Assembly (NCBI GenBank): GCA_053919585.1
Contig: CM132807.1
Strand: one strand, 5' to 3'
Source of the DNA: Euprymna scolopes
Taxonomy: Eukaryota
DNA length: 64,000 bases
A program made the translations under genes and the position numbers. Shown one piece after another: positions 6,528 through 6,983 of the stretch (position 1 is its first letter; each line of letters opens with the position of its first letter). A model generated the notes under the pieces. The model was not told the origin of the DNA. It saw only the letters and a program-made list of their open reading frames with translations, and made no database searches.

Positions 6528-6970
6528 TGTGGAAAAAACTAGAAGTTACTGGTTGCTCAGGAGAGACGGGAGTAGGTGCACTTACCTTGTTACTAACCAA
6601 AAGAGTTGTTGTTTCCTAGAAGCGTTACACAGCTTTACCTTGGTCATGTGATGGTGATCACATGACCTTTTCAGACTTATAAAGGGAGGTAATAAAACTC
6701 TAGGGGGAGGTTACAATTTCAGTTGTATTTACAAATTTGCTGCTGAAGGTTACAATTTCAGTTGTATTTACCAATTTATTGCTGATGGTTACAATTTCAG
6801 TGGTGTTTACTTTTGCTGATGATGCTGATGATTACATTGCTTTACTTATTTTGTAAACTGACTGTCACGTCGCGGAAGAGGCACTTCTTTCGCAACTCTA
6901 AAGGTGAGTGGATCTTGCTTCCTTCTCGACTGAGCAGTCTTATTACTTCTAGGAAATTAAATTTTCCACA
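6528..6970 (+). repeat. 5' LTR of BEL/Pao family A
   Basis: Direct repeat of 12428-12868 (about 15 substitutions and 2 indels by eye, about 96%). It has a 9-bp terminal inverted repeat, TGTGGAAAA/TTTTCCACA. Confidence 0.97.
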
Positions 6971-6972
6971 TA

Positions 6973-6983
6973 TTGCGAAAGAA
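6973..6983 (+). promoter_or_regulatory. Non-tRNA primer-binding site TTGCGAAAGAA, complementary to LTR 6885-6895 (putative self-priming)
   Basis: Occupies the PBS position 2 nt after the LTR end and does not start with TGG. It is the exact reverse complement of TTCTTTCGCAA at 6885-6895, which is also present in the 3' LTR. Confidence 0.8.

What the first reader, a model, noticed from the sequence alone, without database searches (positions are those of the whole stretch)
6885..6983. Family A: PBS position is the exact reverse complement of an 11-nt segment inside its own LTR
After the LTR end (CCACA, 6970) come 2 nt (TA) and then TTGCGAAAGAA (6973-6983). This pairs perfectly with TTCTTTCGCAA (6885-6895), which is conserved in the 3' LTR. 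The chance of an 11-mer match in a ~440-nt LTR is roughly 440/4^11, about 1e-4 (somewhat higher with AT bias). Eleven nt is also the Tf1 self-primer length. Caveat: the TATA-like element at about 6678 suggests the transcript may start upstream of 6885. The primer could therefore arise by internal cleavage or from the RNA 3' end rather than being the first 11 nt.
Basis: partly seen in the sequence, partly recalled or inferred. Interest (0 to 1): 0.85.

Follow-up and report, generated by a model that had tools for sequence, protein, structure and literature searches.

The report
Self-priming site in BEL/Pao retrotransposons
Two decayed BEL/Pao retrotransposons in this window, and one intact relative from elsewhere, lack the usual tRNA docking site next to their left repeat and carry instead a short sequence that pairs perfectly with a segment of their own repeat, so they probably start copying themselves with a piece of their own RNA, as the yeast element Tf1 does.

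Summary
TTGCGAAAGAA (6973-6983) lies 2 nt after the 5' LTR (6528-6970). It is the exact reverse complement of 6885-6895 and of 12783-12793 in the 3' LTR. Chance probability is about 5e-4.

The element is a decayed BEL/Pao (Belpaoviridae) retrotransposon. ICTV describes this family as tRNA-primed.

The main support is comparative:
- Family B, in the same window, shares about 48% pol identity with A. It has a different 12-nt site (TTGCAACGAAAT, 24165-24176), also 2 nt after its LTR. That site is the exact complement of a segment of its own 3' LTR (30277-30288), P about 1.5e-4.
- An intact BEL/Pao element from a different clade (L066) shows a 10-nt version with the same geometry.
- Eleven BEL/Pao families with a classical TGG-type tRNA site show no anchored LTR complement longer than 6 nt.
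- None of the three self-complementary elements has a TGG site.

Best explanation: Tf1-like self-priming of reverse transcription, apparently not yet described for BEL/Pao.

Still open: whether the primer segment is the 5' end of the transcript, whether RNase H cuts there, and whether a host tRNA fragment could serve as primer instead. No host tRNAs or transcripts were available.

Verdict: a new variant of a known mechanism, of moderate interest.

The parts
6528..6970 (+). Family A 5' LTR (443 nt, TGTGG...CCACA)
   Evidence: LTR pair alignment; ends checked
6885..6895 (+). Candidate self-primer segment in the 5' LTR (TTCTTTCGCAA); its 3' end is 75 nt before the LTR end
   Evidence: Exact reverse complement of 6973-6983
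6952..6967 (+). Small hairpin (GGAAA...UUUCC) 5 nt upstream of the primer-binding site, in a U5-IR-like position
   Evidence: RNA fold
6971..6972 (+). 2-nt spacer (TA) between the LTR's terminal CA and the primer-binding site
   Evidence: mirrors the TG spacer between the polypurine tract and the 3' LTR
6973..6983 (+). Primer-binding site of family A (TTGCGAAAGAA); no TGG
6998..7864 (+). gag ORF (DUF1759), ending in an in-frame TAA at 7862-7864
   Evidence: Pfam
7871..12307 (+). Decayed pol region: Peptidase_A17 (9416-10705), Integrase_H2C2 (10709-11137), DUF5641 (11769-11984); reading frame changes near 8800, 9285 and 11040
   Evidence: Pfam; tblastn frames
12397..12427 (+). T-rich tract, polypurine tract GGGGAA (12420-12425) and TG spacer (12426-12427)
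   Evidence: a 23-nt block is conserved with family B
12428..12868 (+). Family A 3' LTR
12783..12793 (+). Second copy of the candidate primer segment, in the 3' LTR
23789..24162 (+). Family B 5' LTR, flanked by the 4-bp target duplication ATAC (23785-23788 and 30345-30348)
24095..24106 (+). Family B primer segment in the 5' LTR (ATTTCATTGCAA); differs from the 3' LTR copy at 24100 (CpA versus CpG)
24142..24161 (+). Family B hairpin just upstream of its primer-binding site
   Evidence: RNA fold
24165..24176 (+). Family B primer-binding site (TTGCAACGAAAT), following the 2-nt spacer CA (24163-24164)
29974..30344 (+). Family B 3' LTR, preceded by a duplicated GGGGAATG polypurine motif (29955-29973)
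30277..30288 (+). Family B primer segment in the 3' LTR (ATTTCGTTGCAA), exact 12-nt complement of 24165-24176
   Evidence: P about 1.5e-4

Best explanation
Families A and B are BEL/Pao LTR retrotransposons that start minus-strand DNA synthesis with their own RNA rather than with a host tRNA.

Proposed mechanism. A short segment in the R/U5 part of the LTR folds back over 56-75 nt and pairs with the primer-binding site, which begins 2 nt after the LTR. The segment is 11 nt in A and 12 nt in B. The element's RNase H (inferred) cuts at the 3' edge of the segment (after 6895 in A), leaving a 3'-OH annealed to the site. Reverse transcriptase extends it through the last 77 nt of the LTR region. That strong-stop DNA then transfers to the identical stretch in the 3' LTR copy of the RNA. 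Later, plus-strand synthesis copies the primer back into DNA. The binding site is therefore re-templated from the LTR segment in every cycle, which explains why the two sides change together between families.

Shown: the anatomy, the position of the site, the absence of a tRNA-type site, the covariation between families, and the absence of the feature in tRNA-type relatives.

Inferred: the cleavage, the enzyme, and that the segment is the first nucleotides of the transcript. I put that last point at about even odds, given self-priming.

Both window copies are dead, so this describes how the families worked when they were active.
For: 1. Identity. Pfam gives DUF1759 gag, Peptidase_A17, Integrase_H2C2 and DUF5641 in A and B. 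tblastn shows both are collinear with intact BEL/Pao polyproteins.

2. Position. In both families the complementary site begins exactly 2 nt after the LTR's terminal CA. This mirrors the arrangement GGGGAA, TG, LTR at the other end. The primer's 3' end must anneal here, because anything further downstream would be copied into the LTR.

3. No tRNA site. No TGG occurs between the LTR end and the gag ATG in A, nor at the LTR end in B or L066.

4. Covariation. A pairs TTCTTTCGCAA with TTGCGAAAGAA. B pairs ATTTCGTTGCAA with TTGCAACGAAAT. The two share 48% pol identity and are sister families. Markov-null P is about 5e-4 for A and 1.5e-4 for B.

5. Independent case. L066 has an intact 1845-aa ORF, 100% identical 177-nt LTRs and the target duplication ATGAC. 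Its 10-nt site lies 3 nt after the LTR and is complementary to a segment 62 nt before the LTR end (P about 0.01). An AATAAA lies 14 nt after that segment, which fits transcription starting at the segment.

6. Controls. Eleven BEL/Pao families with LTR pairs and TGG-type sites have a best anchored complement of 6 nt or less. This gives 3 of 3 against 0 of 11, Fisher P about 0.003.

7. Structure. Folding closes each region with the primer/site stem: z = -3.7 for A, -4.8 for B, -2.1 for L066. A and B also carry a hairpin 3-5 nt upstream of the site. Tf1 needs a U5-IR-like stem-loop (title of Lin and Levin 1998, as listed in PMC7175516).

8. Precedent. In Tf1 the first 11 bases pair with the binding site and RNase H cuts between bases 11 and 12 (PMC7175516).
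Against: 1. The transcription start is unknown. In A, TATAAA (6678) and AATAAA (6691) could define a start and poly(A) site near 6710. The segment would then be about 175 nt inside the RNA, and the RNA's 3' end would lack the stretch needed for strand transfer. A similar ATAAA(A)GGGG motif lies about 127 nt upstream of the segment in B.

2. B has no canonical poly(A) signal downstream of its segment. A has only ATTAAA, 9 nt before the LTR end.

3. L002 belongs to the sister group. Its putative LTR end is followed by TTGCAAATTGT, which has no complement anywhere in its contig. However, its LTR is only partly sampled and its boundary is a guess.

4. No host tRNAs were available. The 3' ends of the A and B segments (UUCGCAA, UUGCAA) resemble anticodon loops, so a tRNA-half primer is not excluded.

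5. All copies in the window are decayed, and there is no biochemical evidence.
Confidence: 0.7

Rival explanations
1. A host RNA fragment ending in ...GCAA-3', such as a 5' tRNA half cut in the anticodon loop (as in copia-type half-tRNA priming), is the true primer. On this view the LTR segment is a U5-to-binding-site stem that masks or presents the site, like the U5-IR and U5-leader stems of retroviruses.
For: Half-tRNA priming is documented or predicted for several Ty1/copia lineages (PMC6317226). The A and B segments end UU-CGC-AA and UU-GCA-A, which resemble anticodon loops (my inspection, post hoc). Sites in A, B and the putative L002 site all start with TTGC. L002 has no LTR complement in its contig.
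Against: It does not predict exact 11- and 12-nt matches to the element's own LTR in two families whose sites differ (joint chance about 1e-7 from the two values). The L066 and L001 segments do not look like anticodon loops. The LTR segments with their flanks are not tRNA-like: Rfam finds nothing at E <= 1 and ARAGORN finds nothing. A masking stem covering the whole site, and only the site, would compete with the primer.
Confidence: 0.17
2. The inverted repeat closes a structured leader used for packaging, dimerisation or translation control. It has nothing to do with priming, which would occur elsewhere by an unknown route.
For: The closed multi-hairpin folds are more stable than shuffled sequence. 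Retroviral leaders are rich in such elements (general knowledge).
Against: The 3' arm begins exactly at position +3 after the LTR in both A and B. That position is fixed by where minus-strand synthesis starts, and a packaging stem has no reason to be anchored there. No other candidate primer site exists between the LTR and gag in A. The feature is absent from tRNA-primed relatives and present only where the tRNA site is missing.
Confidence: 0.08
3. The match is a chance inverted repeat in AT-rich, repeat-rich DNA.
For: About 2% of arbitrary positions in this window have an anchored inverted match of 11 nt or more within 443 nt.
Against: The feature recurs at the homologous position in family B with a different sequence, and in L066. 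It is absent from 11 control families. Markov-null P values are 5e-4, 1.5e-4 and 0.01. The sequences involved are not low-complexity.
Confidence: 0.03

Closest known systems
Tf1/Tf2 of Schizosaccharomyces pombe (Ty3/gypsy, Tf1/sushi group): experimentally shown self-priming
   Same: A short (11-nt) stretch of the element's own LTR-derived RNA is complementary to the primer-binding site next to the 5' LTR. There is no tRNA site. A hairpin lies adjacent to the site. The fold-back distance is under 100 nt.
   Different: A different superfamily (BEL/Pao, not Ty3/gypsy) in an animal host. Here it is not known that the segment is the first 11 nt of the RNA, nor that RNase H cuts an RNA duplex. B uses 12 nt and L066 uses 10 nt.
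Predicted self-primers: Tj1 (S. japonicus), sushi-ichi and Tcn1 chromoviruses, and the TAR/Houba/Osr-1 Ty1/copia lineage of plants
   Same: They rest on the same kind of inference, from complementarity between an LTR segment and the binding site together with the absence of a tRNA site (PMC4600332, PMC6317226).
   Different: Those cases are in Ty3/gypsy and Ty1/copia. None of the papers found places self-priming in BEL/Pao.
Canonical BEL/Pao (Belpaoviridae, genus Semotivirus)
   Same: The gag (DUF1759), protease, RT, Peptidase_A17, integrase and DUF5641 content; TG...CA LTRs; 4-5 bp target duplications; and a polypurine tract.
   Different: The ICTV profile describes an 18-nt site complementary to the 3' end of tRNA-Arg or tRNA-Gly and states that replication is primed by a host tRNA (PMC8742986). 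A, B and L066 have no such site. The tRNA-type relatives fetched here do (TGGTCCTTCGAGCC..., TGGTGCCGTGACC...).
Half-tRNA priming in Ty1/copia lineages (1/2 tRNA-Met, 1/2 tRNA-Ile)
   Same: A binding site that does not begin with TGG, and a primer 3' end created by cleavage.
   Different: In those lineages the primer is a host tRNA fragment and the LTR carries no copy of it. Here each family's site matches its own LTR.
U5-IR and U5-leader stems flanking the primer-binding site of retroviruses
   Same: Pairing between U5 and sequences around the binding site, and a hairpin next to the site.
   Different: In retroviruses the stems flank a tRNA-complementary site. Here the pairing is the site itself.

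Membership tests
BEL/Pao (Belpaoviridae) LTR retrotransposon | Pao-type gag and pol domains (DUF1759, Peptidase_A17, Integrase_H2C2, DUF5641) in the order gag then pol | tested here: met
   Pfam hits in A, B and L066; both window elements are collinear with intact BEL/Pao polyproteins
BEL/Pao (Belpaoviridae) LTR retrotransposon | Direct LTRs with TG...CA ends, a target-site duplication and a polypurine tract before the 3' LTR | tested here: met
   The target duplication is ATAC in B and ATGAC in L066. In A the flanks do not match (TATT versus GAAT).
BEL/Pao (Belpaoviridae) LTR retrotransposon | Binding site complementary to the 3' end of a host tRNA (tRNA-Arg or tRNA-Gly, per the ICTV profile) | tested here: not met
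   No TGG-initiated site after the LTR in A, B or L066. Relatives in other clades do have one. This is a descriptive feature of the family, not a phylogenetic one.
Tf1-type self-primed retroelement (by mechanism) | The binding site next to the 5' LTR is complementary to a segment of the element's own LTR RNA | tested here: met
   11 nt in A, 12 nt in B (3' LTR copy), 10 nt in L066
Tf1-type self-primed retroelement (by mechanism) | The complementarity is maintained by covariation across diverged relatives | tested here: met
   A and B differ on both sides yet each pairs perfectly. It is absent from 11 tRNA-type families. The sample is small: 2 families in one clade plus 1 elsewhere.
Tf1-type self-primed retroelement (by mechanism) | The complementary segment is the first nucleotides of the genomic RNA | not testable with these tools
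   No transcript data were available. Motif arguments point both ways. The L066 layout fits this feature; the layouts of A and B are ambiguous.
Tf1-type self-primed retroelement (by mechanism) | RNase H cleaves at the 3' edge of the duplexed segment to release the primer | not testable with these tools
   This needs biochemistry. Only the sharp edges of the duplex are visible in the sequence.
Tf1-type self-primed retroelement (by mechanism) | A U5-IR-like stem-loop next to the binding site | tested here: inconclusive
   Single-sequence folds predict a hairpin 3-5 nt upstream of the site in A, B and L001, but not in L066. No covariation test was possible.
Tf1/sushi group of Ty3/gypsy (by phylogeny) | Pol and integrase belong to chromoviral Ty3/gypsy | tested here: not met
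   The domains and closest relatives are BEL/Pao

The most novel reading that the evidence does not exclude
Self-priming has arisen in BEL/Pao, the third LTR-retrotransposon superfamily, at least twice independently: once in the A/B clade (probably of cephalopods) and once in the L066 lineage. In A and B the primer may not be the 5' end of the RNA but an internal segment. That would require either two cuts or a jump to a second genomic RNA, a priming route not described for any retroelement. A further speculation: the anticodon-loop-like 3' ends of the A and B segments could be relics of a tRNA-half primer whose sequence was captured into the LTR.
Probability: 0.2. Interest if true: 0.75.

Novelty: new variant of a known kind. 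Interest (0 to 1): 0.58.

Why it matters
BEL/Pao elements are the least studied LTR-retrotransposon superfamily, and the ICTV profile of the family states that they are tRNA-primed. If some clades prime themselves, self-priming would be known or predicted in all three superfamilies (Ty3/gypsy, Ty1/copia, BEL/Pao). That argues it is either ancient or easily re-evolved.

There is also a practical consequence. Annotation pipelines that look for a tRNA-complementary site would not find one in such elements. The eLife 2026 survey of Ty3/gypsy errantiviruses (PMC13524379) searched only for tRNA 3' ends and found a site in 1151 of 1512 elements.

Finally, the finding offers a simple, testable rule: no TGG site, plus an LTR-internal complement starting 2-3 nt after the LTR.

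Tried and rejected
1. Fetching close relatives. The best pol and gag homologues come from a large ENA assembly, from the cuttlefish Acanthosepion pharaonis assembly and from Logan runs. Seven of nine look-ups returned no DNA because the sample files were too large. The two that did return DNA (L081, L082) lack a usable 5' end.

2. Scans of viral contigs, with a single protein and with an alignment, found nothing.

3. L001, L002 and L003 are the closest relatives with DNA, but each contig holds only part of one LTR.
- L001 has a perfect 12-nt inverted repeat with a 68-nt loop and a very stable fold (3956-3967 / 4036-4047, z = -6.0). Its LTR boundary could not be fixed, so I count it only as suggestive.
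- L003 has 11 bp including one G-U pair, ending 14 nt before the ATG, in very AT-rich sequence. I did not count it.
- L002 shows no complement.

4. The 'Family C' repeats (31824 / 39221) are two LINE 3' ends with poly(A) tails, not LTRs.

5. Near-matches to the 11-mer at 1918, 16642, 54949 and 62837 are unrelated sequence.

6. An apparent similarity between A's 5' flank and its own 3' UTR is not significant.

7. Aligning LTR A with LTR B to locate a shared promoter gave no reliable alignment.

8. tRNA comparison was not possible: ARAGORN found no usable tRNA gene in the window or in 44 loci, and Rfam found nothing.

9. Literature. Six full-text searches found no report of BEL/Pao self-priming. 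Older subscription papers, and three Levin-laboratory papers requested by PMC id, are not held, so an earlier report cannot be excluded.

Full report
**What is there**

The finding lies at the right edge of the 5' LTR of a 6.3-kb LTR retrotransposon, family A. Repeat detection and alignment give LTRs at 6528-6970 and 12428-12868. They run TGTGG...CCACA and differ by 15 mismatches and 2 gap columns.

The interior encodes a DUF1759 gag (6998-7864), a Pao-type Peptidase_A17 region (9416-10705), an Integrase_H2C2 domain and DUF5641. This domain set is that of BEL/Pao (Belpaoviridae).

The copy is dead:
- an in-frame TAA ends gag at 7862-7864;
- the pol frame changes near 8800, 9285 and 11040.

The best named gag relative is from the cuttlefish Acanthosepion pharaonis at 47% identity. 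The host is therefore probably a cephalopod.

**The observation**

After the LTR's terminal CA (6969-6970) come TA and then TTGCGAAAGAA (6973-6983). The exact reverse complement lies at 6885-6895 in the 5' LTR and at 12783-12793 in the 3' LTR. There are no other exact copies in the window. The pairing is exactly 11 bp, with mismatches on both flanks.

- Against first-order Markov LTRs, allowing the site to start 0-6 nt after the LTR, P is about 5e-4.
- An empirical control is less generous. About 2% of arbitrary positions in this AT-rich window have an anchored inverted match of at least 11 nt, mostly in hairpin-rich or low-complexity DNA.

A single case would therefore be only suggestive.

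**Why it is more than chance**

A second BEL/Pao element, family B, lies in the same window.

- Its LTRs are 23789-24162 and 29974-30344, flanked by the 4-bp target duplication ATAC.
- Its pol is about 48% identical in protein to A's. The two are sisters in a tree of 40 BEL/Pao pol sequences.
- Two nt (CA) after its 5' LTR lies TTGCAACGAAAT (24165-24176), a sequence different from A's.
- The 3' LTR contains its exact 12-nt complement at 30277-30288, P about 1.5e-4.
- The 5' LTR copy (24095-24106) differs from the 3' LTR copy at one base, 24100, where it has CpA instead of CpG.

Two diverged families thus keep perfect pairing with different sequences, at the same position and with similar loops. 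The distance from the segment's 3' end to the LTR end is 75 nt in A and 56 nt in B.

Both families also share the left-end layout: a T-rich tract, GGGGAA, TG, then the LTR. This mirrors the right-end layout of LTR, CA, 2 nt, then the site. That symmetry is what retroviral-type integrase end-processing predicts (established knowledge). It fixes the point where the minus-strand primer must sit.

**Survey of relatives**

A scan of metagenome contigs with a pol alignment returned 80 BEL/Pao loci.

| Group | Site after the LTR | Best anchored LTR complement |
|---|---|---|
| 10 families with LTR pairs, all from one host assembly | TGGTCCTTCGAGCC..., 0-4 nt after the LTR | 6 nt or less |
| L010, from another clade | TGGTGCCGTGACC... 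| none |
| L066 | no TGG | 10 nt (below) |

L066 is the only full element without a TGG site. It has an intact 1845-aa ORF, 100% identical 177-nt LTRs and the target duplication ATGAC. Three nt after its LTR lies ATACATAACA, the complement of LTR positions 1790-1799, which end 62 nt before the LTR end (P about 0.01). L066 belongs to a different clade, and a neighbouring member of that clade (L056) has a TGG-type site.

Every element lacking a tRNA site has an anchored LTR complement, and no element with a tRNA site has one. That is 3 of 3 against 0 of 11, Fisher P about 0.003.

L001 is the closest relative of A and B with DNA. It has a perfect 12-nt inverted repeat with a 68-nt loop downstream of pol. 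Its LTR boundary cannot be set from one partial copy, so I treat it as suggestive only.

L002, in the sister group, has a putative LTR end followed by TTGCAAATTGT with no complement in its contig. This is a mild counter-example, weakened by the partly sampled LTR and the guessed boundary.

**Structure**

RNA folding from the segment to the site closes with the segment/site stem in every case. The folds are more stable than shuffles: z = -3.7 for A, -4.8 for B (even with its mismatch), -6.0 for L001 and -2.1 for L066.

In A, B and L001 a small hairpin lies 3-5 nt upstream of the site (6952-6967 in A, 24142-24161 in B). This recalls the U5-IR-like stem-loop required by Tf1 (title of Lin and Levin 1998, listed in PMC7175516). 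These are single-sequence predictions.

**Mechanism proposed**

The best reading is Tf1-like self-priming.

1. The LTR segment folds back onto the site.
2. A cut at the segment's 3' edge provides the 3'-OH.
3. Minus-strand strong-stop DNA copies the last 77 nt of the LTR region in A.
4. That DNA transfers to the same stretch in the 3' LTR part of the RNA.
5. Plus-strand synthesis later copies the primer back. The site is therefore re-templated from the LTR segment each cycle, which accounts for the covariation.

[quoted passage not shown] Tj1, sushi/Tcn1 chromoviruses and the plant TAR/Houba/Osr-1 copia lineage are predicted self-primers on the same kind of evidence (PMC4600332, PMC6317226).

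**What is not settled**

The model requires genomic RNA to extend past the segment in the 3' LTR.

- L066 fits neatly. Its AATAAA lies 14 nt after the segment and 43 nt before the LTR end.
- A has only ATTAAA at 6956, 9 nt before the LTR end.
- B has no canonical signal downstream of its segment.

By my own base-frequency arithmetic, each hexamer is expected about 0.5 times by chance in an LTR of this composition, so these motifs are weak evidence either way.

If transcription does start upstream, the primer would be internal. A second cut or a jump to a partner RNA would then be needed, which would be a new variant.

No host tRNAs were available, and Rfam finds nothing in the region. The 3' ends of the A and B segments resemble anticodon loops, so a tRNA-half primer combined with a U5-to-site masking stem remains the main rival. 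It does not explain exact matches to each family's own LTR.

**Comparison with what is known, and novelty**

The ICTV profile of Belpaoviridae describes an 18-nt site complementary to tRNA-Arg or tRNA-Gly and states that replication is tRNA-primed (PMC8742986). Neither the survey of BEL/Pao in metazoan genomes nor the Sinbad paper mentions primer sites at all.

Six full-text searches found self-priming reported only for Ty3/gypsy and Ty1/copia lineages. Older subscription literature could not be searched.

I therefore rate this a new variant of a known mechanism in a superfamily where it has apparently not been described. It is supported by covariation and controls but not by experiment.

**Verdict**

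- Observation: confirmed.
- Interpretation: supported.
- Self-priming of some form: about 0.7.
- Primer equals the 5' end of the RNA, given self-priming: about even odds.
- Interest: about 0.58.

Noticed in passing
window 6709-6825 (and 12608-12723): Three tandem copies of a 39-nt unit (GGTTACAATTTCAGTTG...) lie inside LTR A, between the TATAAA/AATAAA pair and the primer segment. Family B has no such repeats. They could be enhancer repeats in U3 or a repeat in the leader, depending on where transcription starts.
   Followed up: partly
window 7862-7864: gag of family A ends in an in-frame TAA, and the pol frame continues directly after it. This could be a decay mutation or a natural read-through stop. 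Tj1, a predicted self-primer, also has a stop between gag and pol (PMC4600332).
   Followed up: no
window 6524-6527 versus 12869-12872: Family A has no matching target-site duplication (TATT versus GAAT), unlike B (ATAC) and L066 (ATGAC). The copy may be a recombinant of two insertions, or its flanks may have mutated.
   Followed up: partly
window 29955-29973: The polypurine motif GGGGAATG(TG) is duplicated in tandem immediately before the 3' LTR of family B. A 23-nt block of T-rich tract plus GGGGAATG is nearly identical between A and B, although their pol genes are only about 65% identical in DNA.
   Followed up: partly
window 31824-32700 and 39221-40097: Two copies of the 3' end of a non-LTR (LINE-like) retrotransposon, 84-92% identical and each ending in a poly(A) run. 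These are the first stage's likely 'family C' and are not LTRs.
   Followed up: partly
window 21080-22090: A long array of degenerate short tandem repeats (spacing mostly 10 nt), interrupted by an N run at 21367-21530.
   Followed up: no
L066 1685-7951 (JGI contig Ga0209562_1001061): An apparently active BEL/Pao element: 100% identical 177-nt LTRs, a 5-bp target duplication and one intact 1845-aa gag-pol ORF with all domains. It is the only intact candidate self-primer found.
   Followed up: partly
L011-L079 (WLWD01 contigs): One eukaryotic assembly filed among metagenomes carries at least ten young BEL/Pao families (LTRs 98-100% identical). All share the site core TGGTCCTTCGAG (usually continued CC), but the spacer after the LTR varies from 0 to 4 nt.
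   Followed up: partly
window 3284-3832: A 182-aa ORF next to an N run has no Pfam match. Its nature is unknown.
   Followed up: partly
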